A DNA stretch of 64,000 nt from Macrostomum lignano. Its lineage: Eukaryota. This document shows positions 449 through 63,006 of the stretch, in pieces. Position numbers and translations under genes: made by a program. The stretch lies in contig NIVC01000266.1 of NCBI GenBank assembly GCA_002269645.1, positions 1 through 64,000 of the forward strand, written 5' to 3'. The notes beneath the pieces are model-generated. The model was not told where the DNA came from and made no database searches. It saw nothing but the letters and a program-made list of their open reading frames with translations. Each line of letters opens with the position of its first letter. Position 1 is the first letter of the stretch.

Positions 449-1668
449 CATTTATCCACTTATTCTATTGAATCAAATATACTAAATATCTATACTAGGC
501 CTATACTATTTTGTATAGCATGTTCTCTAAGGGCTGCAGGGCAAAGCATTCAAAAAGGACAAAAAAGTGAAAAAAATTAATCATGAATATCATGGAAGAA
601 TATAGATATAGCCTATAGACTATAGTGTATAGCCTTGCAAGGCTTGCAATTGCAATTTAGCCTTGCAATTTTAACCATAAGCTTATAGTTAAAATTGCCT
701 TGGTTGACTTGCAATAGTTTTGGGCCACTATTCATCTTGTTAATATTAGTGATAAGTCTTGCCAGGGGGTGCATGACCAAGATGGCCACACACCAAGATG
801 GCCACAGTTTATTAAAATGTCTAAATAGATAATATGATGCTCATTTCCTTATTATAATTGGTCACAATTGGTCTTAAGGTATGTCTGTGAGAGCTGTGTC
901 TTATTTGCCCTATAACTATAAGCCAAGTTTTAACATGAAGATTAATAAAGATCAAGATCCACTATTTGCAAACTCAATATTTTAAGTTAAAAAGGCAATA
1001 AATATATGCTCGAACAATTTAAACCCACCTGCAACTTGGCTAGATACTAAATTTTCCAAAAGGGCTTTCCAGACATGAGTCCAAAAATTGAAGTAAGCAG
1101 AAGCAAGTAACTGTATAATTATCCACGAAACTAAAAATGAAGTGTCTGTATGTATGCAAGTATATCTAATAGTAAGTAAGTAAGCTTGGCTCAGGCAAGA
1201 AGCCTGTTTTGGCCAGTATATGTCAGTGTATTTATTATTAATAATAATTCAATAGATAAACTAGATATGAGCGGCTAATTCGGCAATAATATAGTATTTT
1301 GAAAGAGTGTTAATATTTTTTCTACGAAACTTCAAACGATCTTTAACGATAAACCGCCGCGGAAGCCATGCAAATTTCGCGACAGAATCCCCAAATCAGC
1401 ATTTGAAGTTGCTTAACTATCATTTTAAAGCTATCGCTGCTGTAGTAAGTACTTTAGTCACTTTTTGATGTATTAATTTCCATTGCCAATGAATGGGCTC
1501 AAGAGTATACTAATAGTAGACTTGTTTTATAAACGATTAGAACATTTGTCCAAAACGACACTTTTGATATTTTAATCCCAAATGGATAAAATGAAAATCA
1601 TTGCTACGAAAACTATGATTAATGTGCATGAAAATACAAAATAGAATAAAAAAATACTATGAGATATC

Positions 1669-4600
1669 TCAAATCGGCGCTGGAAAGCTCAAATTGGCGC
1701 GGAAAGCTCAAATTGGCGCCGAAAGTCAAATTTGGCGCCAGATCACCAAATCGGCGCCAGTATCGCCAAATCAGCGCCGGAATGCTGAAATCAGCGCTAA
1801 AAAGCCCGGACCAGCGATGGAAAGCTCAAATCGGCGCTGGAAAGCTCAAATTGGCGCGGAAAGCTCAATTGGCGCCAAAAGTCAAATTTGCGCCAGGATC
1901 ACCAAATCGGCGCCAGTATCGCCAAATCAGCGCTGGAATGCTGAAATCAGCGCTAAAAAGCCCGGACCAGCGCTGGAAAGCTCAAATCGGCGCTGGAAAG
2001 CTCAAATTGGCGCGGGAAAGCTCAAATTGGCGCCGAAAGTCAAATTTGGCGCCAGGATCACCAAATTTGGCGCCAGTATCGCAAATCAGCGCCGGAATGC
2101 TGAAAACAGCGCTAAAAAGCCCGGACCAGCGCTGGAAAGCTCAAATTGGCGCGGAAAGCTTAAATTGGCGCCGAAAGCCAAATTTGGCGCCAGGATCACC
2201 AAATCGGCGCCAGTATCGCCAAATCAGCGCCGGAATGCTGAAAACAGCGCTAAAAAGCCCGGACCAGCGCTGGAAAGCTCAAATTGGCGCGGAAAGCTTA
2301 AATTGGCGCCGAAAGCCAAATTTGGCGCCAGGATCACCAAATCGGCGCCAGTATCGCCAAATCAGCGCCGGAATGCTGAAACAGCGCTAAAAAGCCCGGA
2401 CCAGCGCTGGAAAGCTCAAATCGGCGCTGGAAAGCTCAAATTGGCGCGGAAAGCTCAAATTGGCGCCGAAAGTCAAATTTGGCGCCAGGATCACCAAATC
2501 GGCGCCAGGATCCCTTAATCAGCGCTGGAATGCTGAAATCAGCGCTAAAAAGCCCGGACCAGCGCTGGAAAGCTCAAATCGGCGCTGGAAAGCTCAAATT
2601 GGCGCGGAAAGCTCAAATTGGCGCTGAAAGTCAAATTTGCGCCAGGATCACCAAATCGGCGCCAGTATCGCCAAATCAGCGCCGGAATGCTGAAAACAGC
2701 GCTAAAAAGCCCGGACCAGCGATGGAAAGCTCAAATCGGCGCTGGAAAGCTCAAATTGGCGCGGAAAGCTCAAATTGGCGCCAAAAGTCAAATTTGGCGC
2801 CAGGATCACCAAATCGGCGCCAGTATCGCCAAATCAGCGCTGGAATGCTGAAACAGCGCTAAAAAGCCCGGACCAGCGCTGGAAAGCTCAAATTGGCGCG
2901 GAAAGCTTAAATTGGCGCCGAAAGCCAAATTTGGCGCCAGGATCACCAAATCGGCGCCAGTATCGCCAAATCAGCGCCGGAATGCTGAAAACAGCGCTAA
3001 AAAGCCCGGACCAGCGCTGGAAAGCTCAAATTGGCGCGGGAAAGCTCAAATTGGCGCCGAAAGTCAAATTTGGCGCCAGGATCACCAAATTTGGCGCCAG
3101 TATCGCCAAATCAGCGCCGGAATGCTGAAAACAGCGCTAAAAAGCCCGACCAGCGCTGGAAAGCTCAAATTGGCGCGGAAAGCTTAAATTGGCGCCGAAA
3201 GCCAAATTTGGCGCCAGGATCACCAAATCGGCGCCAGTATCGCCAAATCAGCGCCGGAATGCTGAAAACAGCGCTAAAAAGCCCGGACCAGCGCTGGAAA
3301 GCTCAAATTGGCGCGGAAAGCTTAAATTGGCGCCGAAAGCCAAATTTGGCGCCAGGATCACCAAATCGGCGCCAGTATCGCCAAATCAGCGCCGGAATGC
3401 TGAAAACAGCGCTAAAAAGCCCGGACCAGCGCTGGAAAGCTCAAATTGGCGCGGAAAGCTTAAATTGGCGCCGAAAGCCAAATTTGGCGCCAGGATCACC
3501 AAATCGGCGCCAGTATCGCCAAATCAGCGCCGGAATGCTGAAAACAGCGCTAAAAAGCCGGACCAGCGCTGGAAAGCTCAAATTGGCGCGGAAAGCTTAA
3601 ATTGGCGCCGAAAGCCAAATTTGGCGCCAGGATCACCAAATCGGCGCCAGTATCGCCAAATCAGCGCCGGAATGCTGAAAACAGCGCTAAAAAGCCCGGA
3701 CCAGCGCTGGAAAGCTCAAATCGGCGCTGGAAAGCTCAAATTGGCGCGGAAAGCTCAAATTGGCGCCGAAAGTCAAATTTGGCGCCAGGATCACCAAATC
3801 GGCGCCAGTATCGCCAAATCAGCGCCGGAATGCTGAAATCAGCGCTAAAAAGCCCGGACCAGCGCTGGAAAGCTCAAATCGGCGCTGGAAAGCTCAAATT
3901 GGCGCGGAAAGCTCAAATTGGCGCCGAAAGTCAAATTTGGCGCCAGGATCACCAAATCGGCGCCAGTATCGCCAAATCAGCGCTGGAATGCTGAAAACAG
4001 CGCTAAAAAGCCCGGACCAGCGCTGGAAAGCTCAAATTGGCGCGGAAAGCTTAAATTGGCGCCGAAAGCCAAATTTGGCGCCAGGATCACCAAATCGGCG
4101 CCAGTATCGCCAAATCAGCGCCGGAATGCTGAAAACAGCGCTAAAAAGCCCGGACCAGCGCTGGAAAGCTTAAATTGGCGCGGAAAGCTTAAATTGGCGC
4201 CGAAAGCCAAATTTGGCGCCAGGATCACCAAATCGGCGCCAGTATCGCCAAATCAGCGCCGGAATGCTGAAAACAGCACTAAAAAGCCCGGACCAGCGCT
4301 GGAAAGCTCAAATCGGCGCTGGAAAGCTCAAATTGGCGCGGAAAGCTCAAATTGGCGCCGAAAGCCAAATTTGGCGCCAGGATCACCAAATCGGCGCCAG
4401 GATCCCTTAATCAGCGCTGGAATGCTGAAATCAGCGCTAAAAAGCCCGGACCAGCGCTGGAAAGCTCAAATCGGCGCTGGAAAGCTCAAATTGGCGCGGA
4501 AAGCTCAAATTGGCGCCGAAAGTCAAATTTGGCGCCAGGATCACCAAATCGGCGCCAGTATCGCCAAATCAGCGCTGGAATGCTGAAATCAGCGCTAAAA

Positions 4601-6880
4601 AGCCCGGACCAGCGCTGGAAAGCTCCAATCGGCGCTGGAAAGCTCAAATTGGCGCGGGAAAGCTCAAATTGGCGCCGAAAGTCAAATTTGGCGCCAGGAT
4701 CACCAAATTTGGCGCCAGTATCGCCAAATCAGCGCCGGAATGCTGAAAACAGCGCTAAAAAGCCCGGACCAGCGCTGGAAAGCTCAAATTGGCGCGGAAA
4801 GCTTAAATTGGCGCCAAAAGCCAAATTTGGCGCCAGGATCACCAAATCGGCGCCAGTATCGCCAAATCAGCGCCGGAATGCTGAAAACAGCGCTAAAAAG
4901 CCCGGACCAGCGCTGGAAAGCTCAAATTGGCGCGGAAAGCTTAAATTGGCGCCGAAAGCCAAATTTGGCGCCAGGATCACTAAATCGGCGCCAGTATCGC
5001 CAAATCAGCGCCGGAATGCTGAAAACAGCGCTAAAAAGCCCGGACCAGCGATGGAAAGCTCAAATCGGCGCTGGAAAGCTCAAATTGGCGCGGAAAGCTC
5101 AAATTGGCGCCAAAAGTCAAATTTGGCGCCAGGATCACCAAATCGGCGCCAGTATCGCCAAATCAGCGCTGGAATGCTGAAATCAGCGCTAAAAAGCCCG
5201 GACCAGCGCTGGAAAGCTCAAATCGGCGCTGGAAAGCTCAAATTGGCGCGGGAAAGCTCAAATTGGCGCTGAAAGTCAAATTTGGCGCCAGGATCACCAA
5301 ATCAGCGCCGGAATGCTGAAAACAGCGCCAAAAAGCCCGGACCAGCGCTGGAAAGCTCAAATCGGCGCTGGAAAGCTCAAATTGGCGCGGAAAGCTCAAA
5401 TTGGCGCCGAAAGTCAAATTTGGCGCCAGGATCACCAAATCGGCGCCAGGATCCCTTAATCAGCGCTGGAATGCTGAAATCAGCGCTAAAAAGCCCGGAC
5501 CAGCGCTGGAAAGCTCAAATCGGCGCTGGAAAGCTCAAATTGGCGCGGAAAGCTCAAATTGGCGCCGAAAGTCAAATTTGGCGCCAGGATCACCAAATCG
5601 GCGCCAGTATCGCCAAATCAGCGCCGGAATGCTGAAATCAGCGCTAAAAAGCCCGGACCAGCGCTGGAAAGCTCAAATCGGCGCTGGAAAGCTCAAATTG
5701 GCGCGGAAAGCTCAAATTGGCGCCGAAAGTCAAATTTGGCGCCAGGATCACCAAATCGGCGCCAGTATCGCCAAATCAGCGCCGGAATGCTGAAAACAGC
5801 GCTAAAAAGCCCGGACCAGCGCTGGAAAGCTCAAATCGGCGCTGGAAAGCTCAAATTGGCGCGGGAAAGCTCAAATTGGCGCCGAAAGTCAAATTTGGCG
5901 CCAGGATCACCAAATTTGGCGCCAGTATCGCCAAATCAGCGCCGGAATGCTGAAAACAGCGCTAAAAAGCCCGGACCAGCGCTGGAAAGCTCAAATCGGC
6001 GCTGGAAAGCTCAAATTGGCGCGGAAAGCTCAAATTGGCGCGGAACGTCAAATTTGGCGCCAGGATCACCAAATCGGCGCCAGGATCCCTTAATCAGCGC
6101 TGGAATGCTGAAATCAGCGCTAAAAAGCCCGGACCAGCGCTGGAAAGCTCAAATCGGCGCTGGAAAGCTCAAATTGGCGCGGGAAAGCTCAAATTGGCGC
6201 CGAAAGTCAAATTTGGCGCCAGGATCACCAAATCGGCGCCAGTATCGCCAAATCAGCGCCGGAATGCTGAAAACAGCGCCAAAAAGCCCGGACCAGCGCT
6301 GGAAAGCTCAAATCGGCGCTGGAAAGCTCAAATTGGCGCGGGAAAGCTCAAATTGGCGCCGAAAGTCAAATTTGGCGCCAGTATCGCCAAATCAGCGCCG
6401 GAATGCTGAAAACAGCGCTAAAAAGCCCGGACCAGCGCTGGAAAGCTCAAATCGGCGCTGGAAAGCTCAAATTGGCGCGGAAAGCTCAAATTGGCGCCGA
6501 AAGTCAAATTTGGCGCCAGGATCACCAAATCGGCGCCAGGATCCCTTAATCAGCGCTGGAATGCTGAAATCAGCGCTAAAAAGCCCGGACCAGCGCTGGA
6601 AAGCTCAAATCGGCGCTGGAAAGCTCAAATTGGCGCGGAAAGCTCAAATTGGCGCCGAAAGTCAAATTTGGCGCTAGGATCACCAAATCGGCGCCAGTAT
6701 CGCCAAATCAGCGCCGGAATGCTGAAAACAGCGCTAAAAAGCCCGGACCAGCGCTGGAAAGCTCAAATCGGCGCTGGAAAGCTCAAATTGGCGCGGAAAG
6801 CTCAAATTGGCGCCGAAAGTCAAATTTGGCGCCAGGATCACCAAATCGGCGCCAGGATCCCTTAATCAGCGCTGGAATGT
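1669..6880. repeat. Satellite array, about 5.2 kb, 139- and 158-bp monomers built from ~19-20-bp subunits
   Basis: Period 139 (3190/3329/3468) and 158 (3760/3918). Each subunit has a GGCGCC/GGCGCG/AGCGCT core separated by A/T tracts. Confidence 0.97.
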
Positions 6881-6921
6881 GCCAACGGGCGTAGAAGTGG
6901 CAGCATATATCAGCTTGCTAC

Positions 6922-6986
6922 TTTTGGGCGCCAATTTTAATTTACCGGCGCCAATTTTAGCCTTTCGGCGCCCATTTTAGCGCCCT
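6922..6986 (-). mobile_element. Inverted short copy of the satellite subunits ending in a hAT-like terminus (CAGGGCGCTAAAATGGGCGCCGAAAGG on minus)
   Basis: TTTGGGCGCCAATTTT, CCGGCGCCAATTTT, TTTCGGCGCCC are reverse complements of the array motif AAATTGGCGCCGAAA. The block ends in GCGCCCTG at 6986. Confidence 0.45.
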
Positions 6987-7633
6987 GGCAAGGTCATTGC
7001 ATTTAGTTCTCACGCAATGGAGCCGAAAAAAGAGTTTTTTTTCTTTTTTGAATTAGTGCCATGTATCTTGACAACCAATGCGAGTCAAGTTCTGGCGTCT
7101 GCTTCTCCACAGCCCCGTAATGGCATATCCTAATAATTGTGGGCTGGCCCGCGCTAAGGGAGCCCACCCCACCGTGGGGCGGACCCCGCTAACGGGCTAT
7201 TTTTAGCGTGGGATGGGCTCCGCTAACGGGCGGCCATAAACTGGAGCGTGGGCTTCACTCGGAAAATCCGAGTAAAATTTCTCGTTTCGCGGCTGTACTC
7301 TCGTACACACTCATTATTTTTTTGTTTGAAATATAAGTTCCAAGTATTTTATATCACCCTAAATATGCTAGCACTATCATTCTCTTTAGGTTTGCTGTTT
7401 AACATTTAACATCAAACAAGGCACTAAAAGCCTTCAACATAGATTTTTTTCCGATTCCAGCTGTAAATTAATATGAATCTGTAAAACTTGTTTACATATT
7501 CATATTCATTTACAGTTTAATTATCGAAACCAGTTCGGATTTCAGCTTCGAAACTTTTATTTTTATTATTCTACCTATTGCAGGGTTTACTGCAAAAGAA
7601 ATTGAAATCAAAAGAATTTGAATCAATATTGCA

Positions 7634-12590: not shown

Positions 12591-12620
12591 ATTTCACTCT
12601 TCCACTCTTCAGCGGCCCGA

Positions 12621-13811
12621 ATGAGCGAGCCGACGCTGCGGCTACTCCGGCGCATAGTCGGCTCTTTTCCTCAGCCAATGAGCGCCTGCTTCGCCTACGG
12701 CTCGGCGGTGTTTGAACAGTCTGGCCGGGTCCGCGGCAGCGGCATGCTAGACCTAGTGTTCGTGGTGCCGGACAGTCGAGCTTGGCACGAGGCCAACCTG
12801 GCCAGACACCGGTCGCACTATTCCGGCTTGGGCAGTCTGGGTGCTGGCGCGGTCGCCCGCATACAGGAGGGCCTCGGAGCCGGTGTTTATTTCAATACGC
12901 TGGTGCCCGCGGCCGAGGGCCGGACAGTGAAGTACGGCGTGGTCAGCGTCGACTCTCTGCTGGCCGATCTGACCGAGTGGCGCTGGCTGTACCTGGCCGG
13001 CCGGCTGCACAAGCCCGTTGCCTGGGTTGTTGAGCCGGACAGTACTGGCCAAGACTGTCCGAGATTATCTGAAGCTTTGGATGCCAACCGGACGGCGGCA
13101 CTCGCCGCGGGTCTGCTGACTTTGCTGCCGGACAGTCGGGTTGATCGACGACGCCTGCTGGCGGCCGTCTGCGGGCTCAGCTACGGTGGTGACGTTCGGA
13201 TGACCTTTGCTGAGGACTCCGGCAAGGTGCGATGGTTTTCTGGTTCAAATATTTTTGACACCTTTTCTTTGAAACGGGCAGTTATCTAAAAAATTGCCGT
13301 AGCAACTTTTGTGTAGAGTTTACCAGCTAGTAAATAAATCAATGGAGCGGAGTGATATGCTTTTTTCTTACTACTTGTTAGTTGTCGAACTCACGAAAAC
13401 AATTCTCAGGTCCAGAACATCGCCGTGCCGCAGGCGCCGCTGCTGACAGACATCTACCGTCCGCTGGCCGCTAAACGACTGCCTTTTCTTACCTGGCAGC
13501 AACAAGACTCCGCTGATTCCAACGATGACGTCATCACTTGGACGGCCGAACCCGACCAGCTGGCCGAGCTTATTGCCTGCCTGCCGGCTCCGCTGGCCTC
13601 GGAGCTCACTGCGCCACTGCAATCCGGCGCCAGCGCGCGTGACATCGCCAAAATTCTACGGAGTCGACTTCGTCGTATCGTGTCCAGGTCCAGCCTCGGC
13701 CAAACGGCGAAGAGCGCCGTCACAGCTGGTGTGCTCAAGTCCGTGCGCTACGGCGGCGCTAAGGTGGCCAAGTGGTTCGCCTCAGTTGCACCGTGGTTAA
13801 CAAAACGATAA
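12621..13811 (+). CDS. TAMM41: Mitochondrial phosphatidate cytidylyltransferase Tam41/Mmp37, 335 aa
   Basis: Exons 12621-13226 and 13410-13811, phase 0, 1008 nt. Family motifs FAYGSAVFEQ, MLDLVF, GVYFNTLV, KYGVVS, DLTEWRWLYLAGRLHKPV, LSYGGDVRM-AED-GKV-NI. Confidence 0.95.
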
Positions 13812-14629: not shown

Positions 14630-15183
14630 CTAGCCGACAAAAATCGCCGCCAATTCGCTGTTCAGCTTCAGGAGATTTCGCACCGATTTGAACTGCATCG
14701 CGTGACTCGCGCAGGATTCTGAAATTTGATTTTTTGCATTTATTATGCCGATTTTTCCTCTCGCTACTACTAACAGTAGAGTCTAAGAAATCGTCACTGG
14801 TAAAAAAGGCCTCAACTCACCAGCCGTGGCCGCCTCGGAGTTCACCGTGCTGGGGGCGGCGGCCATGACGGCGCGGCTTAACTCTGGCGTCATGCCTACC
14901 AGGCCGTGCAAAGCGGTTTCCATGGCGACAGCATCGATCAGGGAGTCGCCGTCGGATCTGCTTGACATGCGCTGTTAGGAATAGGAGTGTTGGTTTCTGC
15001 GTATCAGCTACGAGTCTGCAAGTGCAAATAGGCGGAATCCAAGCCTGGGGGATCCTCACCGTCATAGCGTCTCTCAGGATTGCTTCGGCACCGTCTGGGC
15101 AGCAAAGCAGAGCGGCTGCGATGTGCAGCCAGCGGGGGTCGATGCGGCCGCTGCCTGACTGGAACGGAGCGGGGATGACTGTC

Positions 15184-15240
<57 letters not shown>

Positions 15241-18028
15241 GCAGAACCGCACCCAGTCGAAGATGTCAAACACGAGTCGCATCCAGGACTCCAGCGGCCC
15301 GGGCAGGGCGGCCTCCGCTGCCAGCTCGTGCGGACACAGCAGCTTGGGCGGCCCAGGCGTCAGTCGGTTCAACAGCTGCACTGCCTGGTCGTACCCACCG
15401 TCTTTGTCTTCGCCGCAGTCATTCTGGTCGCCTGCAGACGCTGAGGCTGGTAGCAGGCGTCGGAACAGGCGACGCAGACCGCTCAGCGGGAAGCCGAGGT
15501 GGCGGAGGCCGCGACGGCGAGCCGCTTTGAACAGCAGGACGTCCGTGTAGGAATGGTCGCTCACTGGCAGGCCGGCGTGCCTGGAGATTCGTTATGAGAG
15601 AGGACAACAGCCAATCAGCGAGCGCGGAGGATGGGGTGGGCGTCGCGGGTTAAAAATGAGGGACTTCACTGAATATACTACTATTAAAGACGGCAAATGA
15701 GTACATCCAATGTCTTTAAAATTCTTTACCTAGCCAGGAGATCGCGGACATTGTTGGCGTAAAGCTGTGGATTGGCGCGCTCTTCAGCCGACGGATGATA
15801 CACAGGTAAGAACTGCAGCGGCAGGTTGATTGGGAATGAAGATTGGGGACAGGAAAGCCTCATTACAAAACGGGTTTCAAGTTTGGTTCAGGGTGGAATT
15901 CCAGGTGTGGGTTCAGGACCGGTTCTCAGGTGTGGGTTCAGGACCGGTTCTCAGGTGTGGGTTCAGGACCGGTTCTCAGGTGTGGGTTCAGGACCGGTTC
16001 TCAGGTGTGGGTTCAGGACCGGTTCTCAGGTGTGGGTTCAGGACCGGTTCTCAGGTGTGGGTTCAGGACCGGTTCTCAGGTGTGGGTTCAGGACCGGTTC
16101 TCAGGTGTGGGTTCAGGACCGGTTCTCAGGTGTGGGTTCAGGACCGGTTCTCAGGTGTGGGTTCAGGACCGGTTCTCAGGTGTGGGTTTATGAACATTTA
16201 GTATTAAGCTATTAAGATTAAGCTACCTGCACTGTTGCGAATTACTGTGTCTATACCGGTACAAACCTCAACGTGCAGCTCAGAGTAGACCCGAGAGCCG
16301 CACCTGAAGATCATATGGAACCTGCAAATGACGGGATATGATATCATTTTAATTGGGATATGATGGCTTACGATGGGATAAATATCCCCCCCCGATCTAC
16401 TACTCACATGGAGGGCCCGTCAACAGCCCAGCACTGCAGCTGCAGGGGATCCCGATGCCGCACCAGCACCGGCTGCACCGGGACGCCGGGAGCGAAGGCG
16501 CCCAGACGGAAGCCGATCAGCGCCCCGCCATTGGTGCACGTGCCTTCGGGGAAGACCAGCAGCTGGCGGAAGCCTCCGCCATTCAGGCAGCTGCGCGCCC
16601 TGTCTACAATTTCCTCGGCCGCTTTGGCGCGCATCCGGCGATTGTCCCGGTACACCACCACCGCCTCGCCTGCTGGCACCATCACTGCGGGACAGGGCAA
16701 GTGGGGGCTGTGTACTGCCGGCTATTGGGGGCTGTGAACTGCCGGGTATTGGGGGCTGTGAACTGCCGGATATTGGGCTTTGAACTGCTGGCTATTGGGG
16801 GCTGTGAACTGCCGGGTATTGGGCTGTGAACTGCCAGGTATTGGGGACTGTGAACTGCCGGCTATTGGGGGCTGTGAACTGCCGGCTATTGGGGGCTGTG
16901 AACTGCCGGCTATTGGGGGCTGTGAACTGCCGGCTATTGGGGGCTGTGAACTGCCGGCTATTGGGGGCTGTGAACTGCCGGCTATTGGGGGCTGTGAACT
17001 GCCGGCTATTGGGGCTGTGAACTGCCAGGTATTGGGGACTGTGAACTGCCGGCTATTGGGGGCTGTGAACTGCCTGGAGGTGTTGTTGAAAGACCCTATT
17101 TAAGACTGTTTACAGTGACTAATAGGGACGTGCTTGCAAAAACTATTAATAAGCACACCATTATAAAAGAAATTCTTCGGCGCCTTGGTCACCGGAGCGA
17201 GCATCGGGCGCTGGCAGAAGAACACCACCGTGTCAGTCAGAGAGGTGTGCGGCGCCGCCACCAGCAGAGGCGCCTCGCGGACACTGGCGCGCCGGCCTTT
17301 CAGGTGAATTCGCTGGTAGCCGCCCACGAACGCCCCATGCGGCCGATGTTGAGCAGCAGGTGATCCGCCACCCAGCTGGATATTGGGGTGTAAAGGTACT
17401 CTTTTTTCCTGTAGGTAGCAGCCTTTGCAATGTGCATTTTTATGCAAAGCTGTGCAAAGCTCCAGCGACCTCCCCAATGTACACTGCATTCCCGACCAAC
17501 CCCGCTTCCCAATGTACATTCCACTCCAAACCAACCCCACCTCCCGAATGTACACTCCACTCCCGACCAACCCCACCTCCCCAATGTACACTCCACTCCA
17601 GACCAACCCCACCTCCTCAATGTACACTCCATGTAACAGGTAGGATTTTGTGTCCATCCTGCCTGCACCTTCTGCTCACGTCGGATAACAAAGAATTGAA
17701 CTCGAAGCACGGTTTTTCTGGGCCCAGGCTGCTGCGGCCACCCCCAAAAACCTCACCTCCGCCAAGGAGACAGAGGCGCGGTGGCTTTGCCCCCAATCTG
17801 GGTGACAAAAGACACCAGGAAAGCCAAGGCCAGCGACAGGATCAGCAGAAGCAGCCGCACGGGGAACAGCAGCAAGCCGAGCAGGGGCACAGTCAGATAG
17901 TGGTACCAGAAGAAGCCCGCCCGATGGTAAAACGGATTGAACGGCCGAGGCGGCAGAGGCAGCGAGCAGACGCAGGTGTCGGCCGTGTCTGCCGTGACGG
18001 CCGAGTCACCGCTGGACGACGGCTGCCC
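14630..18028 (-). CDS. LPCAT: Lysophosphatidylcholine acyltransferase LPCAT1/2-like with degenerate EF-hand C-terminus, ~524 aa; one apparent 1-nt frameshift; no genomic ATG in the first exon
   Basis: Exons 18028-17757, 17375-17159, 16684-16408, 16321-16267, 15812-15730, 15580-15253, 15158-15060, 14971-14821, 14718-14630; all GT-AG. Phases are consistent after adding one base in the C4 run at 17333-17336. Motifs [17 protein letters not shown] (HxxxxD), [52 protein letters not shown]. Confidence 0.92.
15180..15243. repeat. (GACA)n in an LPCAT intron
   Basis: Directly visible. Confidence 0.95.
15898..16190. repeat. 25-bp minisatellite AGGTGTGGGTTCAGGACCGGTTCTC (~11 copies) in an LPCAT intron
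   Basis: Near-perfect tandem copies. Confidence 0.95.
16703..17075. repeat. 24-bp minisatellite GCTATTGGGGGCTGTGAACTGCCG in LPCAT intron 2
   Basis: Tandem copies directly visible. Confidence 0.95.
17469..17631 (+). repeat. 36-bp minisatellite GACCAACCCCACCTCCCCAATGTACACTCCACTCCA in LPCAT intron 1
   Basis: About 4.5 copies. Confidence 0.93.
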
Positions 18029-18171
18029 CTGAAAGACGGCGGCGGCGGCGTCAACAGAGATTGTTGCGGCTGATGCGAGTAGTCTAGCACGATTATTCTC
18101 TAACAATATTTTAAATCGATTTTGTCTGGTCCAGTACTGCAGCTTTTTACATTAGAATGAGGGTTATTTAT

Positions 18172-18740
18172 GAGTGGAATTTACATTGGGGAGGTAGGGT
18201 TGGTAGGGAATGGAGTGTACATTGGGGAGGTGGGGTTGGTCTGGAGTGGAGTGTACATTGGGGAGGTGGGGTTGGTCTGGAGTGGAGTGTACATTGGGGA
18301 GTAGGGTTGGTCTGGAGTGGAGTGTACATTGGGGAGTAGGGTTGGTCGGGAGTGGAGTGTACATTGGAGAGGTGGATTTGGTCTGGAGTGGAGTGTACAT
18401 TATATTAGGGAGGTGGGGTTGGTCGGGAATGGAGTGTACATTGGGGAGGTGGGGTTGGTCTGGAGTGGAGTGTACATTGGGGAGTAGGGTTGGTCGGGAG
18501 TGGAGTGTACATTGGAGAGGTGGATTTGGTCTGGAGTGGAGTGTACATTATATTAGGGAGGTGGGGTTGGTCGGGAATGGAGTGTACATTGGGGAGGTGA
18601 GTTCGTCGGGAGCGAGTGTACATTGGGGGTGGGGTTGGTCGGGAGTGGAGTGTACATTGGGAAGGTGGATTTGGTCTGGAGTGGAGTGTACATTGGGGAG
18701 TGGGGTTGGTCAGGAGTGGAGTGTACATTGGAGAGGTGGG
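18172..18740 (-). repeat. Same 36-bp minisatellite in inverted orientation, upstream of LPCAT exon 1
   Basis: Unit TGGAGTGGAGTGTACATTGGGGAGGTGGGGTTGGTC is the reverse complement of the 17469-17631 unit; about 16 copies. Confidence 0.93.
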
Positions 18741-19251
18741 GTGATAATTTCAATTGACTACTAAAGTAATATCTGTAGTCTGAATTGCTGAAACAATCGG
18801 TGAAATATGGTAATATTTATCAATCATAAAATGATGTAGCCTTTGGTTATAGAGGCTACATTAATATCCGCAGTTATCCTGTATATTTGCAAAGAAAACG
18901 TCAGCATTGCAACACGCAATTTTCAGGTTGCATTATTACTGTCGCCTTAGGATAAAAAAGAAGTGAACAAAAGTTACGCACAGGTAAATTCAGATTAAGT
19001 GCCAGCGGAGTGTTTAAGATAGAATAAATTCAGACGAATAACGAAAGAAAATACAAAAAGGTTTTTATAAATAAAATTAAGGCATTTGTATCAGCGCTGG
19101 ATAGCACCACAGATAATATAGAATGACTATGATAATATAGGTTTATGCATTAGCCGTGATTTAGCTTAAATTTTTGTTTTAACTTGCCAATTCTTAAATA
19201 GTCGGGAATTGCTAAACTGAAGTTCAAATAGAAAAAACAATTTCGGGACAC

Positions 19252-19278
19252 ACAAGAGGTCCCGGGTTCGAACTCGGA
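19252..19278 (+). other. Isolated tRNA T-arm / Pol III B-box-like fragment
   Basis: GAGGTCCCGGGTTCGAACTCGG; no convincing A box or cloverleaf. Confidence 0.25.
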
Positions 19279-19454
19279 AAATTAATTCAGGGTTTATTGC
19301 ATAATAGAAAATCTACGCATCAATACATAGAGGTGCTGCATTGCAATCTGGAAAATATATAAAAAAATTACAGGTAAGCACACAAACTGTGCTGCTACTC
19401 TACAGTATCTGGCACACTTGGCCAGATTACACAATCCTATCTATCCAGTGAGAT

Positions 19455-20010
19455 AGGGCCGGATTCTCAGGTGTTGGGGTTCAGTGCCGGATTCTCAGGT
19501 GTTGGGGTTCAGGGCCGGATTCTCAGGTGTTGGGGTTCAGTGCCGGATTCTCAAGTGTTGGGGTTCAGTGCCGGATTCTCAGGTGTTGGGGTTCAGGGTC
19601 AGAATCTTCAGGTGCTAGGGTTCAGGTTTTAGTTCAGGGTCAGATCCTCAGATGTTGGGGTTCAGAGTCAAATTCCTCAGGTGCTAGGGTTCAGGGTCAG
19701 ATTCTCAGGTGCTAGGGTTCAGGTTTTAGTTCAGGGTCGGATTCCTCAGGTGCTTGGGTTCAGGTTTTAGTTCAGGTCGGATTCCTCAGGTGTTGGGGTT
19801 CAGGGTCAGAATCCTCAGGTGCTAGGGTTCAGGTTTTAGTTCAGGTCGGATTCCTCAGGTGCTAGGGTTCAGGTTTTAGTTCAGGTCGGATTCCTCAGGT
19901 GCTAGGGTTCAGGTTTTAGTTCAGGTCGGATTCCTCAGGTGCTAGGGTTCAGGGTCAGAATCCTCAGGTGCTAGGGTTCAGGTTTAGTTCAGGTTCGGAT
20001 TCTCTGGTTT
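19455..20010. repeat. Composite ~28-38-bp minisatellite (GGATTCTCAGGTGTTGGGGTTCAG / GCTAGGGTTCAGGTTTTAGTTCAGG)
   Basis: Tandem copies. The CTCAGGTG..GGGTTCAG core is shared with 15898-16190. Confidence 0.9.
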
Positions 20011-20108
20011 CAGTTTTTCAGCTTTGATACGCGGAACAAGTGTCAGACGATGTTAACTCAATAAAAATTCAAATATTCAAACAAATATCAGTGTAACTGT
20101 CCCAGAGC

Positions 20109-52995: not shown

Positions 52996-53524
52996 CTTGC
53001 ACCTCTCCTCCTTCACCTCTCCATCTCCCACTCCGCTCTCATTTATCCTATATGAAGCAGTCACAAAGGCCAGTAAAATTTCCACGACTTGGTCTGTTGG
53101 CCCAAATCCTCCATTTCAATAAACATCCGTTTCCATGCCAAGACATAGGAACTAAAAATAACCTAAGGGTGAAGGGTGTTCAGCATCTGTCCAATAGAAT
53201 TTTTGTGGAGATTCGAGGCTGGGATTTGTCTTGCTAGACTAAGCTTGGCCAGGCTTTGGCTAAAGACACACAAAAACTGATCGAGAACAAAGGAGCTGAG
53301 GATATATCCGCGGGATAAAACGCGTCACATCCCTTTGAATTTTCCCAAGCTTATTTGCTTGGCCGGCAGTTCAGCACCACCACCCCCGGCTTAATGTGGC
53401 CCCGATCAAAGACTGCATTCGATAGCTGACGGCAGCAGTCGGCAGCTGACGATAGCGACAGGTGGGGGTCAAGGGGGTATAAACAGCAGTTCATGGGTGC
53501 AAATAGGATGAGGTGACCGGGAAA

Positions 53525-55763
<2,239 letters not shown>

Positions 55764-56335
55764 CCAGTCTTTATTTACGGCAATACCGAAGCTCACTGAC
55801 AGCATGGGGATAAAAAAGCAGCGAAAAGGCCCGGTCTGCCATCCCATTGTTTGTTCTCGGGCTTCTTTTTCCCGGAACTCTCCGTTTCCCCCGAGCTCAA
55901 GCAAACTTGGATCCGGGTTTTTACTCCGCATCTGTCGCCCTCCCGCCTCCCAGAACTCCTCAGTTCCGGTGCTGGGCAGGGTCAGTGCAGCGGGCAGACA
56001 AATTCGGGAATAAATTCCCCTTTCTTAGATAATTACACAATGGGAAAATTTTCTCCGTGTTGGCAAGTCGCCGGTCACGTGACCTGCCGGGACAGGCCGC
56101 CTCTCCCGTCCGGAAGTGGGGCCTCTGTGTGCGTGAAAATTCTCCTGCAAAATGTTTATTAATACGAAATAAAACTTATGTCGCAAGTTGGGGTTCGGCT
56201 GGATGAGTTTCACGACTCAAAGCGATGCGTGTCTCGCTCGATACTTTGAGTTCCCTTTTAGCAGTTCTCGCTACACGGGACTGGCCTTATTCAGTGTTGT
56301 GGCTTGAGTCAGCTCGACTTTGAATCTGACTCAAG

Positions 56336-61665: not shown

Positions 61666-62417
61666 GACAGCACACAGACAGAACTCATTGCCCGATCTTG
61701 CGAAGACACGAGTTCATAACCTGTCAAGCAGTAATGATAGCTCGGTGATGCTGATCCTCGCTCCCAATTAACCTGCTACTCCCACACCTCATCTCTGTCC
61801 TGAAATGCCGCCTTCTGCTGACTCATGCATGCCTTCTGCCCGCCAAAGCCCGAGCTGTTCTCTGGTTCGAGCCGATGGGAGCAGCCAAATGCAGGTGAGT
61901 CGCAATTATAAAATCCCTCAAGCTCGAATGATGCTCTCCCTGGAGCAACAAAATCCGTACAACTTCCCTATTAACTGAGTTCCCCAAGGTGACCTCCCAT
62001 AACCCGCTCCCGCGGTGGGATATGCCCAGATTCCCGCACGGAAATCCCCTTCAACTTCCTCTTTGCGACGGGAAAATTATAGCCGCAGAGAAAAACATTT
62101 TCCTCTTCATCATTCGAATCCAGAATTGGTCGATAATGCGAGAAGGACTTCGATTGATCCTGAGGTAGCGGAGGAGTCTCTACTACGGATCAGGCAGGGT
62201 TTCGGTGGCTGGGAGCGCTGCTTAGTCATTTGTTTGTGTTGGCCTGCCTGCCGCTTAGCGGTATCGATCGGTGGCGGAATCAAAATGGGTCTCCGTTTGA
62301 TGGTGGAATGGGTAGGGGAGTCTGGGAGACCACCAGACTGGGAGATCGGGTGCTCAATGCCCCTGTATGAACTCCAACCTGCTGTAAATAGCAATGATTG
62401 GCATTTGAGTCACTTAG

Positions 62418-63006
<589 letters not shown>

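What the first reader, a model, noticed from the sequence alone, without database searches (positions are those of the whole stretch)
17757..18110. LPCAT first exon has no ATG in any frame; a TTTCAG acceptor in phase 0 gives an N-terminus of normal length
Seen: no CAT occurs on the + strand between 17757 and 18120, so the exon encoding the conserved NPF...FPVRLL segment has no start codon. Adding AUG at CTTTCAG|18028 gives [34 protein letters not shown], about 31 residues before NPF, close to vertebrate LPCAT1 (about 29 from memory). Inference: Met1 comes from the spliced leader.
Basis: partly seen in the sequence, partly recalled or inferred. Interest (0 to 1): 0.75.

Follow-up and report, generated by a model that had tools for sequence, protein, structure and literature searches.

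The report
Flatworm LPCAT start codon from spliced leader
In this flatworm (Macrostomum lignano) the first exon of a membrane lipid-remodelling enzyme has no start codon of its own. It almost certainly takes its AUG from the short leader RNA that is trans-spliced onto the message, a mechanism already known in flatworms, so this is a clean but ordinary example.

Summary
On the minus strand there is no ATG in any frame from 18149 to 17757. Exon 1 (18028-17757) encodes the conserved NPF...FPVRLL segment and starts directly after CTTTCAG in phase 0.

The window is 100% identical to Macrostomum lignano contig NIVC01000266.1. The spliced leader of this species ends in ...TTGCATG. Two other assembled copies of the locus also lack an ATG here.

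In one of those copies the transcript-based GenBank model (PAA81356.1, flagged 'partial', 523 aa) begins GQPSSS..., on the first base after that acceptor. I reproduced that protein exactly by splicing the DNA.

Adding the leader AUG gives MGQPSSS... with NPF at residue 32. Complete homologs place NPF at residues 12-42. The acceptor fits the published M. lignano trans-splice motif [T/C]TNCAG, and no consensus donor lies in the 2 kb upstream.

I did not see any SL-junction reads, so leader addition and initiation at its AUG remain inferred (confidence about 0.8).

The mechanism was described in Schistosoma in 2006 and has been suggested for Macrostomum. This is therefore a new instance of a known kind, mainly of annotation value. 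The window copy also carries a 1-nt homopolymer deletion in exon 2, which truncated its GenBank model to 375 aa.

The parts
18029..18035 (-). Trans-splice acceptor CTTTCAG. The AG is at 18030-18029. The last six bases, TTTCAG, fit the M. lignano trans-splice motif [T/C]TNCAG.
   Evidence: Sequence read. Motif from PMC8629364. The GenBank CDS of sister copy L006 starts on the base after the same AG.
17757..18028 (-). LPCAT-like gene (Mlig012950) coding exon 1, 272 nt, with no ATG in any frame. It encodes GQPSSS...PRPF-NPF...FPVRLL and the N-terminal transmembrane segment. Phase 0 at the 5' end, phase 2 at the donor AG|GTGAGG.
18036..18154 (-). End of the presumed outron. The frame stays open back to the TAA at 18154-18152 and there is no ATG. 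It holds two other candidate acceptors: CTGCAG|TAC (exon would start at 18136, also phase 0) and GCATCAG|CC (AG at 18071-18070, leader AUG would be out of frame). The older WormBase/ML2 models start at 18067, 2 nt after the second of these.
17336..17338 (-). First genomic in-frame ATG of the mature mRNA (Met104, 'NIGRMGAFV'). It lies after the conserved N-terminal motif and transmembrane segment.
   Evidence: first ATG at CDS nt 309. GenBank model PAA86813.1 of copy L004 starts here.
17333..17336 (-). G-run of 4 where copies L004 and L006 have 5. This 1-nt deletion shifts the frame in exon 2 of the window copy. It is probably a long-read homopolymer error.
   Evidence: Intact ML2-derived proteins A0A1I8H4U0 / A0A1I8HJJ1.
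17159..17375 (-). Exon 2, starting at the annotated acceptor atatccag|CTGGGT. An alternative acceptor ctacag|G at 17408 would add 11 aa. It encodes the HX4D motif (PHTSLTD).
   Evidence: only the 17375-type acceptor reproduces the deposited 523-aa protein..
14630..16684 (-). Exons 3-9 at 16684-16408, 16321-16267, 15812-15730, 15580-15253, 15158-15060, 14971-14821 and 14718-14630 (the last includes the TAG stop). All introns are GT-AG.
   Evidence: The model is identical in structure to PAA81356.1.
18172..20002 (.). Intergenic spacer between the GSS stop (20111-20109) and the LPCAT acceptor. It has a 36-nt satellite at 18172-18742, 28-40-nt satellites at 19458-20002, and AT-rich unique DNA between them. 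There is no GT[AG]AG donor on the coding strand.

Best explanation
The gene is the Macrostomum lignano LPCAT1/2-like acyltransferase Mlig012950. Its pre-mRNA is trans-spliced at CTTTCAG|G (window 18028). The spliced leader, ...CAATTTATTGCATG, is joined so that its 3'-terminal AUG sits directly in front of GGG CAG CCG in phase 0.

That AUG, about 33 nt from the cap, is the only AUG able to open the frame encoding the conserved N-terminal NPF...FPVRLL membrane-anchor region. The mature protein would therefore start [10 protein letters not shown]... and be 524 aa long.

Shown here:
- the organism identity;
- the absence of ATG in three copies;
- the acceptor motif and its phase;
- the annotated mRNA 5' end at the acceptor;
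- the normal N-terminal length.

Inferred:
- the leader is actually joined at this AG in vivo;
- ribosomes initiate at its AUG.

The gene may be the downstream member of a polycistronic unit with glutathione synthetase (weaker inference).
For: Organism. The window is 100% identical over 18.5 kb to NIVC01000266.1 of assembly GCA_002269645.1. The neighbouring GSS gene is 100% identical to an M. lignano UniRef entry.

Leader. The SL is CGGTCTCTTACTGCGAAGACTCAATTTATTGCATG (PMC8629364), with a longer consensus in PMC5173321. PMC10468722 states that the final ATG is likely the translation start.

Sequence. There is no ATG from 18149 to 17757, and the same holds in L004 and L006.

Annotated 5' end. 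The GenBank CDS of copy L006 spans 15233-19455 and starts on the first base after tctttcag. Splicing the DNA gave exactly the deposited 523-aa PAA81356.1, 'partial', which starts GQPSSS. A 5'-partial ORF must reach the transcript's 5' end, so the annotated mRNA begins within 0-2 nt of the AG. The annotation pipeline (TBONE) sets mRNA 5' ends from peaks of SL-containing reads (PMC5730564).

Acceptor. TTTCAG fits [T/C]TNCAG, the top motif at M. lignano trans-splice sites.

Upstream DNA. No GT[AG]AG donor lies on the coding strand in the 2,080 nt upstream. No ATG-initiated phase-0 upstream exon ends in a consensus donor.

N-terminus. NPF would be at residue 32. In complete homologs it starts at residues 12-42.

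Precedent. All reported flatworm SLs end in AUG. In S. mansoni it is in frame in 28% of trans-spliced mRNAs, and more than 40 cDNAs need it as initiator.
Against: No SL-junction read, 5' RACE product, ribosome footprint or peptide was accessible, so leader addition at this AG and initiation at its AUG are not observed directly.

The older ML2/WormBase models (A0A1I8H4U0, A0A1I8HJJ1) start 13 codons upstream of the acceptor. RNA that reads through the acceptor, or an alternative acceptor at 18070 that is out of frame with the leader AUG, may therefore exist.

Annotated 5' ends in this GenBank record are not always at an AG. Those of GSS, the DEAD-box helicase and ESF2 are not, so the coincidence is persuasive but not proof.

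The -3 position of the leader AUG is T (weak context), although +4 is G.
Confidence: 0.8

Rival explanations
1. The leader AUG is not used, or the mRNA is not trans-spliced at 18028. Translation starts instead at the first genomic AUG, Met104 (17338-17336). The product would be an N-terminally truncated enzyme without the NPF motif and membrane anchor.
For: No ATG in any frame lies between the acceptor and Met104, so scanning ribosomes that miss the leader AUG would reach it. GenBank model PAA86813.1 starts there. The context of the leader AUG has T at -3. ATG depletion over 393 nt is stronger than chance (0.4% of shuffles).
Against: The 103 codons upstream are a clean open frame encoding the family-wide NPF...P(V/I)R motif and transmembrane helix, with GC-rich third positions. 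They would be untranslated under this model. PAA86813.1 starts at Met104 only because of a 1-nt homopolymer deletion in exon 1 of that contig. This product could coexist as a minor isoform.
Confidence: 0.08
2. An unannotated upstream exon carrying a genomic ATG, somewhere in 18110-20100, is cis-spliced to 18028 or to another acceptor.
For: Flatworm acceptors are often shared between cis- and trans-splicing (PMC12582326). The spacer is repeat-rich, and RNA-seq mapping is poor in such regions.
Against: None of the 18 ATG-initiated, phase-0 candidate exons ends in the GT[AG]AG consensus, and most lie inside the 36-nt satellite. There is no GT[AG]AG at all on this strand in the 2,080 nt. Neither the transcript-based GenBank models nor the ML2 models contain an upstream exon.
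Confidence: 0.05
3. A non-trans-spliced mRNA initiates at a near-cognate (non-AUG) codon in the 41-codon open frame upstream of the acceptor.
For: The frame is open to 18151. The ML2 models include 13 of these codons. In-frame CTG, TTG, ATA and ATC codons are present (sequence).
Against: There is no conservation argument for these residues, and the region is AT-rich apart from the last 40 nt. Non-AUG initiation is rare, whereas a leader AUG is available in this species. The newer annotation ends the mRNA at the acceptor.
Confidence: 0.04
4. The missing ATG is an artefact: an assembly error or a decaying pseudogene copy.
For: This very contig has 1-nt homopolymer deletions that break LPCAT exon 2 and the helicase's first exon.
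Against: Three independent Mlig_3_7 contigs and two ML2-derived protein models agree on the sequence around the acceptor. None has an ATG. The other copies have intact frames.
Confidence: 0.03

Closest known systems
[quoted passage not shown]
   Same: A flatworm SL ends in AUG. The acceptor is placed so that this AUG is in frame with an ORF that has no genomic start codon, and the N-terminus so created matches homologs.
   Different: The species is a free-living macrostomorphan and the SL sequence differs. Here the evidence is genomic and annotation-based, not cDNA or translation assays.
Macrostomum lignano SL trans-splicing and operons (Wudarski et al. 2017, PMC5730564; Ustyantsev & Berezikov 2021, PMC8629364; Wiberg et al. 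2023, PMC10468722)
   Same: Same genome, the same 35-nt SL, and the same acceptor motif [T/C]TNCAG. The gene is conserved with human, the class enriched among trans-spliced genes. The repeat-adjusted distance to the upstream gene is 964 nt, under their 1-kb operon threshold.
   Different: Those papers do not analyse use of the SL AUG gene by gene. Wiberg et al. only remark that the ATG is 'likely' a start codon. Mlig012950 is not mentioned in any text or held supplement searched.
slORFs: ORFs created by start codons within spliced leaders in nematodes, Oikopleura and trypanosomes (slORFfinder, PMC9851317)
   Same: The start codon is supplied in trans by the leader.
   Different: In those taxa the codons are mostly near-cognate and the ORFs are often novel or short. 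Here a canonical AUG opens a conserved enzyme's main ORF.
Vertebrate LPCAT1/LPCAT2 (AGPAT/PlsC superfamily)
   Same: The N-terminal NPF...FPVRLL segment with transmembrane helix is present, as are the HX4D, FPEGTCTN and PVQPV motifs. Identity to animal LPCAT1/2 is 33-38%.
   Different: Pfam detects no C-terminal EF-hand. The start codon is not encoded in the gene.

Membership tests
Flatworm mRNA whose initiator Met is the SL 3'-terminal AUG | The species has an SL RNA whose leader ends in AUG immediately before the donor GU | tested here: met
   The window is identified as M. lignano. The SL ...TTGCATG followed by GTAAG is published (PMC8629364; PMC5173321). There is no SL gene in the window itself.
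Flatworm mRNA whose initiator Met is the SL 3'-terminal AUG | The leader is joined in vivo to the acceptor at the 5' end of the first coding exon (SL-junction reads or RACE) | not testable with these tools
   Only indirect evidence is available. The GenBank 5'-partial CDS of copy L006 starts on the first base after TTTCAG. The pipeline places such ends from SL-read peaks. The acceptor motif fits.
Flatworm mRNA whose initiator Met is the SL 3'-terminal AUG | The SL AUG is in frame with the main ORF, with no intervening stop | tested here: met
   ATG|GGG CAG CCG... is in phase 0. The frame is open through exon 1 into exon 2 and to the stop in the intact copy.
Flatworm mRNA whose initiator Met is the SL 3'-terminal AUG | No genomic in-frame AUG upstream of sequence that homologs show to be coding | tested here: met
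   No ATG in any frame from 18149 to 17757 in three copies. The first in-frame ATG is codon 104, after the conserved NPF...PVR segment.
Flatworm mRNA whose initiator Met is the SL 3'-terminal AUG | Translation actually initiates at the SL AUG | not testable with these tools
   This needs ribosome profiling, N-terminal proteomics or a reporter assay.
LPCAT1/2-type lysophospholipid acyltransferase (PlsC/AGPAT superfamily) | PlsC acyltransferase domain with motifs HX4D, (F)PEGT and a PxQPV-type motif IV | tested here: met
   PF01553 at E=6.6e-11, residues 114-238. [15 protein letters not shown] and PVQPV were read in P0165.
LPCAT1/2-type lysophospholipid acyltransferase (PlsC/AGPAT superfamily) | N-terminal NPF motif followed by a hydrophobic anchor containing P(V/I)R | tested here: met
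   Alignment A1 has invariant P33, P57 and R59. The motif is found in 20 homologs.
LPCAT1/2-type lysophospholipid acyltransferase (PlsC/AGPAT superfamily) | C-terminal EF-hand calcium-binding motifs | tested here: not met
   No EF-hand family at E<=0.01 in Pfam. There is only a marginal tblastn similarity, E=0.39. The gene is therefore best called 'LPCAT-like'.
M. lignano operon (polycistronic unit resolved by SL trans-splicing) | Same-strand neighbours, with the downstream gene trans-spliced and a repeat-adjusted intergenic distance under 1 kb | tested here: inconclusive
   The GSS stop to the LPCAT acceptor is 2,080 nt, or 964 nt after removing tandem repeats. The threshold is from PMC8629364. 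No read evidence for a joint precursor is available.

The most novel reading that the evidence does not exclude
Synthesis of full-length, membrane-anchored LPCAT may depend strictly on which trans-splice acceptor is used. At 18028 the leader AUG is in frame. At 18069 it is out of frame and opens a 68-codon overlapping ORF. With no trans-splicing there is no AUG until Met104. Acceptor choice, or leaky scanning, would then switch between an anchored enzyme, a truncated soluble one and no product. In addition, the leader-created N-terminus MGQPSSS fits the loose N-myristoylation pattern, so trans-splicing could also create a lipidation site.
Probability: 0.1. Interest if true: 0.5.

Novelty: new member of a known kind. 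Interest (0 to 1): 0.25.

Why it matters
The main value is for annotation. In the M. lignano GenBank and UniProt records this gene appears as three different proteins: 'partial' at 523 aa, and truncated at 420 and 375 aa, the last two starting at internal Met codons. The older models are 536 aa and have no Met. Appending the leader AUG at the trans-splice site gives one complete 524-aa protein.

The neighbouring glutathione synthetase shows the same pattern, so many '5'-partial' models in this genome are probably complete. The case is also a clean candidate for testing, in a transgenic flatworm, whether translation of a conserved enzyme depends on trans-splicing. It does not reveal a new mechanism.

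Tried and rejected
- Two homology searches with the LPCAT N-terminal exons returned no Macrostomum protein, although the proteins are in the collection (exact look-up). This is a limit of the word-index search, not a sign of absence. I had hoped for RNA-derived ORFs starting MGQPSSS and found none.
- Before the organism was known I considered a protist origin, because the best local match (P0036) came from a compact algal-type metagenome contig. This was rejected after the GSS hit.
- Rfam and tRNA scans of the window found nothing. There is no SL RNA gene in the window or in the three loci.
- P0042 (the WormBase GSS model) is not on record in the contig index. The NCBI cluster members were used instead.
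- My first exon-2 acceptor (ctacag|G, 17408) gave 534 aa and is not in the collection. The acceptor 33 nt downstream reproduces the deposited protein.
- Text and supplement searches for Mlig012950, Mlig005657 and Mlig002428 found nothing.
- I looked for an upstream ATG micro-exon and found only weak candidates inside satellites.
- Divergence between the three copies is too low (1-3 differences in exon 1) to test coding constraint on the first 30 codons.

Full report
**Observation.** The finding concerns the minus strand. Reading 18200 to 17700 in reverse complement shows the exon ...ccgccgtctttcag|GGGCAGCCGTCG...CCTTGGCGGAG|gtgagg.
- A scan finds no CAT on the + strand between 17757 and 18149. 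The nearest upstream ATG (18152-18150) is out of frame and followed directly by TAA.
- The frame encoding [60 protein letters not shown]... is open for 41 further codons upstream without a Met.
- Exon 1 alone lacks ATG in 10% of dinucleotide-preserving shuffles. The full 393-nt ATG-free stretch does so in 0.4%, against about 4.2 ATGs expected.
The lack of a start codon is the significant part; the lack of out-of-frame ATGs is only mildly unusual.

**Organism.** The window is eukaryotic, with GC-rich exons, GT-AG introns and many 24-36-nt satellites and (CAGA)n arrays.
- The gene immediately upstream on the same strand is glutathione synthetase. Its spliced translation is 100% identical to a Macrostomum lignano UniRef entry.
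- Looking up the NCBI members of that cluster returned three contigs of assembly GCA_002269645.1 (Mlig_3_7). The window is 100% identical over 18.5 kb to one of them, NIVC01000266.1 (L005).
- L004 and L006 are two further copies, allelic or duplicated, 94-98% identical.
- All three carry the same gene order: DEAD-box helicase, ESF2, GSS, LPCAT-like acyltransferase, then TAM41 on the other strand.

**The leader.** The M. lignano spliced leader is CGGTCTCTTACTGCGAAGACTCAATTTATTGCATG, followed by GTAAG in the SL RNA gene.
- About 30-39% of genes are trans-spliced, and the top motif at trans-splice acceptors is [T/C]TNCAG (PMC8629364; PMC5730564; PMC5173321).
- Wiberg et al. note that the final ATG is likely a translation start codon (PMC10468722).
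- All reported flatworm leaders end in AUG. In Schistosoma mansoni it is in frame in 28% of trans-spliced mRNAs, and more than 40 cDNAs need it as initiator (Cheng et al. 2006, as summarised in PMC12582326 and PMC9851317).

**Evidence at this gene.** The acceptor TTTCAG|G fits the published motif and is in phase 0 with the ORF.
- In copy L006 the deposited CDS spans 15233-19455, and 15233 is the first base after tctttcag.
- I rebuilt the nine-exon model from DNA. With the exon-2 acceptor atatccag|CTGGGT it gives a 523-aa protein that is present verbatim in the collection as PAA81356.1, 'hypothetical protein BOX15_Mlig012950g3, partial', starting GQPSSS.
- A 5'-partial ORF by definition runs to the transcript's 5' end, so the annotated mRNA begins at the acceptor. 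The annotation pipeline cut transcripts at peaks of SL-containing reads.
- TAM41 in L005 and L006 likewise begins 2 nt after ctcttcag|.
- The annotated 5' ends of GSS, the helicase and ESF2 do not sit at an AG. The coincidence is therefore informative, not automatic.

**Upstream alternatives.** On the coding strand, the 2,080 nt between the GSS stop and the acceptor contain no GT[AG]AG donor.
- The 18 conceivable ATG-initiated, phase-0 upstream exons all end in poor donors, mostly inside the 36-nt satellite.
- Neither annotation generation contains an upstream exon.
- The older ML2/WormBase models (A0A1I8H4U0, A0A1I8HJJ1; 536 aa) begin 13 codons upstream of the acceptor, still without Met. That start is 2 nt after another AG (gcatcag|cc, 18071-18070).
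- This suggests either read-through precursor RNA in the de novo transcriptome or a minor alternative acceptor. With that acceptor the leader AUG would be out of frame.
- A third motif match, CTGCAG|TAC at 18136, would also be in frame.

**N-terminal length and family.** With the leader Met the protein starts MGQPSSS... and NPF begins at residue 32.
- In homologs with complete N-termini the equivalent motif begins at residues 12-42, with two outliers.
- The alignment shows invariant P33, P57 and R59.
- The protein has a PlsC acyltransferase domain and the HX4D, FPEGTCTN and PVQPV motifs. Its best matches are animal LPCAT1/2 at 33-38% identity.
- Pfam finds no EF-hand, so 'LPCAT-like' is the safe name.

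**State of the window copy.** As assembled, exon 2 has GGGG at 17336-17333 where L004 and L006 have GGGGG. This shifts the frame.
- GenBank therefore gives the window copy a 375-aa protein starting at an internal Met (PAA86749.1; window 17204).
- L004 has a different 1-nt G-run deletion in exon 1, and its model starts at Met104.
- The window's helicase gene has a C-run deletion of the same kind.
- The ML2-derived proteins are intact. All lesions are homopolymer deletions in a PacBio-based assembly, so I regard them as assembly errors, not pseudogenisation.

**Mechanism and rivals.** The best explanation (about 0.8) is trans-splicing at 18028, with the leader AUG serving as Met1.
- Rivals are initiation at Met104 giving an anchor-less enzyme (0.08, possibly a minor co-product), an unannotated upstream ATG exon (0.05), non-AUG initiation on unspliced RNA (0.04), and an artefact or pseudogene (0.03).
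- A weaker inference concerns operon structure. The repeat-adjusted GSS-LPCAT distance is 964 nt, under the 1-kb threshold used for M. lignano operons. LPCAT may therefore be processed from a polycistronic precursor.

**Novelty.** The mechanism is textbook for flatworms and has been suggested for Macrostomum. Only this gene-level instance, and its annotation consequences, are new. I could not view reads, so the last step remains inferred.

Noticed in passing
window 22491-22405 (minus strand), GSS first exon: Glutathione synthetase also has no genomic ATG ahead of about 30 conserved N-terminal residues; the first in-frame ATG is at 22407-22405. The WormBase model A0A1I8H5Z9 starts QQHRRN exactly after cccgcag|, in phase 0. 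It aligns from its first residue (Q1) with Met1 of animal GSS homologs. This is a second likely SL-AUG start. The GenBank models instead start 15-18 nt further in, not at an AG.
   Followed up: partly
window 12605-12625 (+ strand), TAM41 5' end: The annotated 5' end lies 2 nt after ctcttcag|. There the leader AUG would be out of frame: ATG CGG CCC GAA TGA. That is a 4-codon upstream ORF overlapping the real ATG at 12621-12623. The same leader can therefore supply a start codon in one gene and create an upstream ORF in its neighbour.
   Followed up: partly
window ~30670 (minus strand) and L004/L006, DEAD-box helicase first exon: In L004 ttccag|GAA ATT GAC... is in frame with the helicase ORF, with no ATG for about 57 codons. 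L006 has ctg instead of cag at that site, and the window copy has a 1-nt C-run deletion (C4 against C5). The 5' end of this gene is unresolved.
   Followed up: partly
window 17333-17336; L004 ~15273; window ~30650: Single-base homopolymer deletions in Mlig_3_7 contigs break ORFs. They produce truncated GenBank proteins of 375, 420 and 497 aa in place of 523/553 aa.
   Followed up: yes
window 18172-18742 and 17468-17631: The same 36-nt satellite (ACCTCCCCAATGTACACTCCACTCCAGACCAACCCC) lies upstream of LPCAT exon 1 and, in inverted orientation, inside intron 1, so it flanks the exon. Introns 2 and 4 contain other satellites of 24-25 nt. Intron 6 is mostly (CTGT)n.
   Followed up: no
window 17376-17408 (minus strand): Exon 2 has two candidate acceptors 33 nt apart: ctacag|G at 17408 and atatccag|C at 17375. 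Only the downstream one reproduces the deposited protein and removes an 11-aa insertion relative to homologs. The upstream one keeps the frame and could be an alternative isoform.
   Followed up: partly
window 1600-7000, 53300-55800, 62400-63000: Very long tandem arrays are present: a roughly 150-nt-period repeat at 1.6-7 kb and kilobase-scale (CAGA)n/(CTGT)n arrays. These are typical of the repeat-rich M. lignano genome.
   Followed up: no
tool behaviour: The word-indexed protein search failed twice to return the M. lignano LPCAT cluster, although exact look-up showed it is in the collection with five members. A negative result from that search should not be read as absence.
   Followed up: yes
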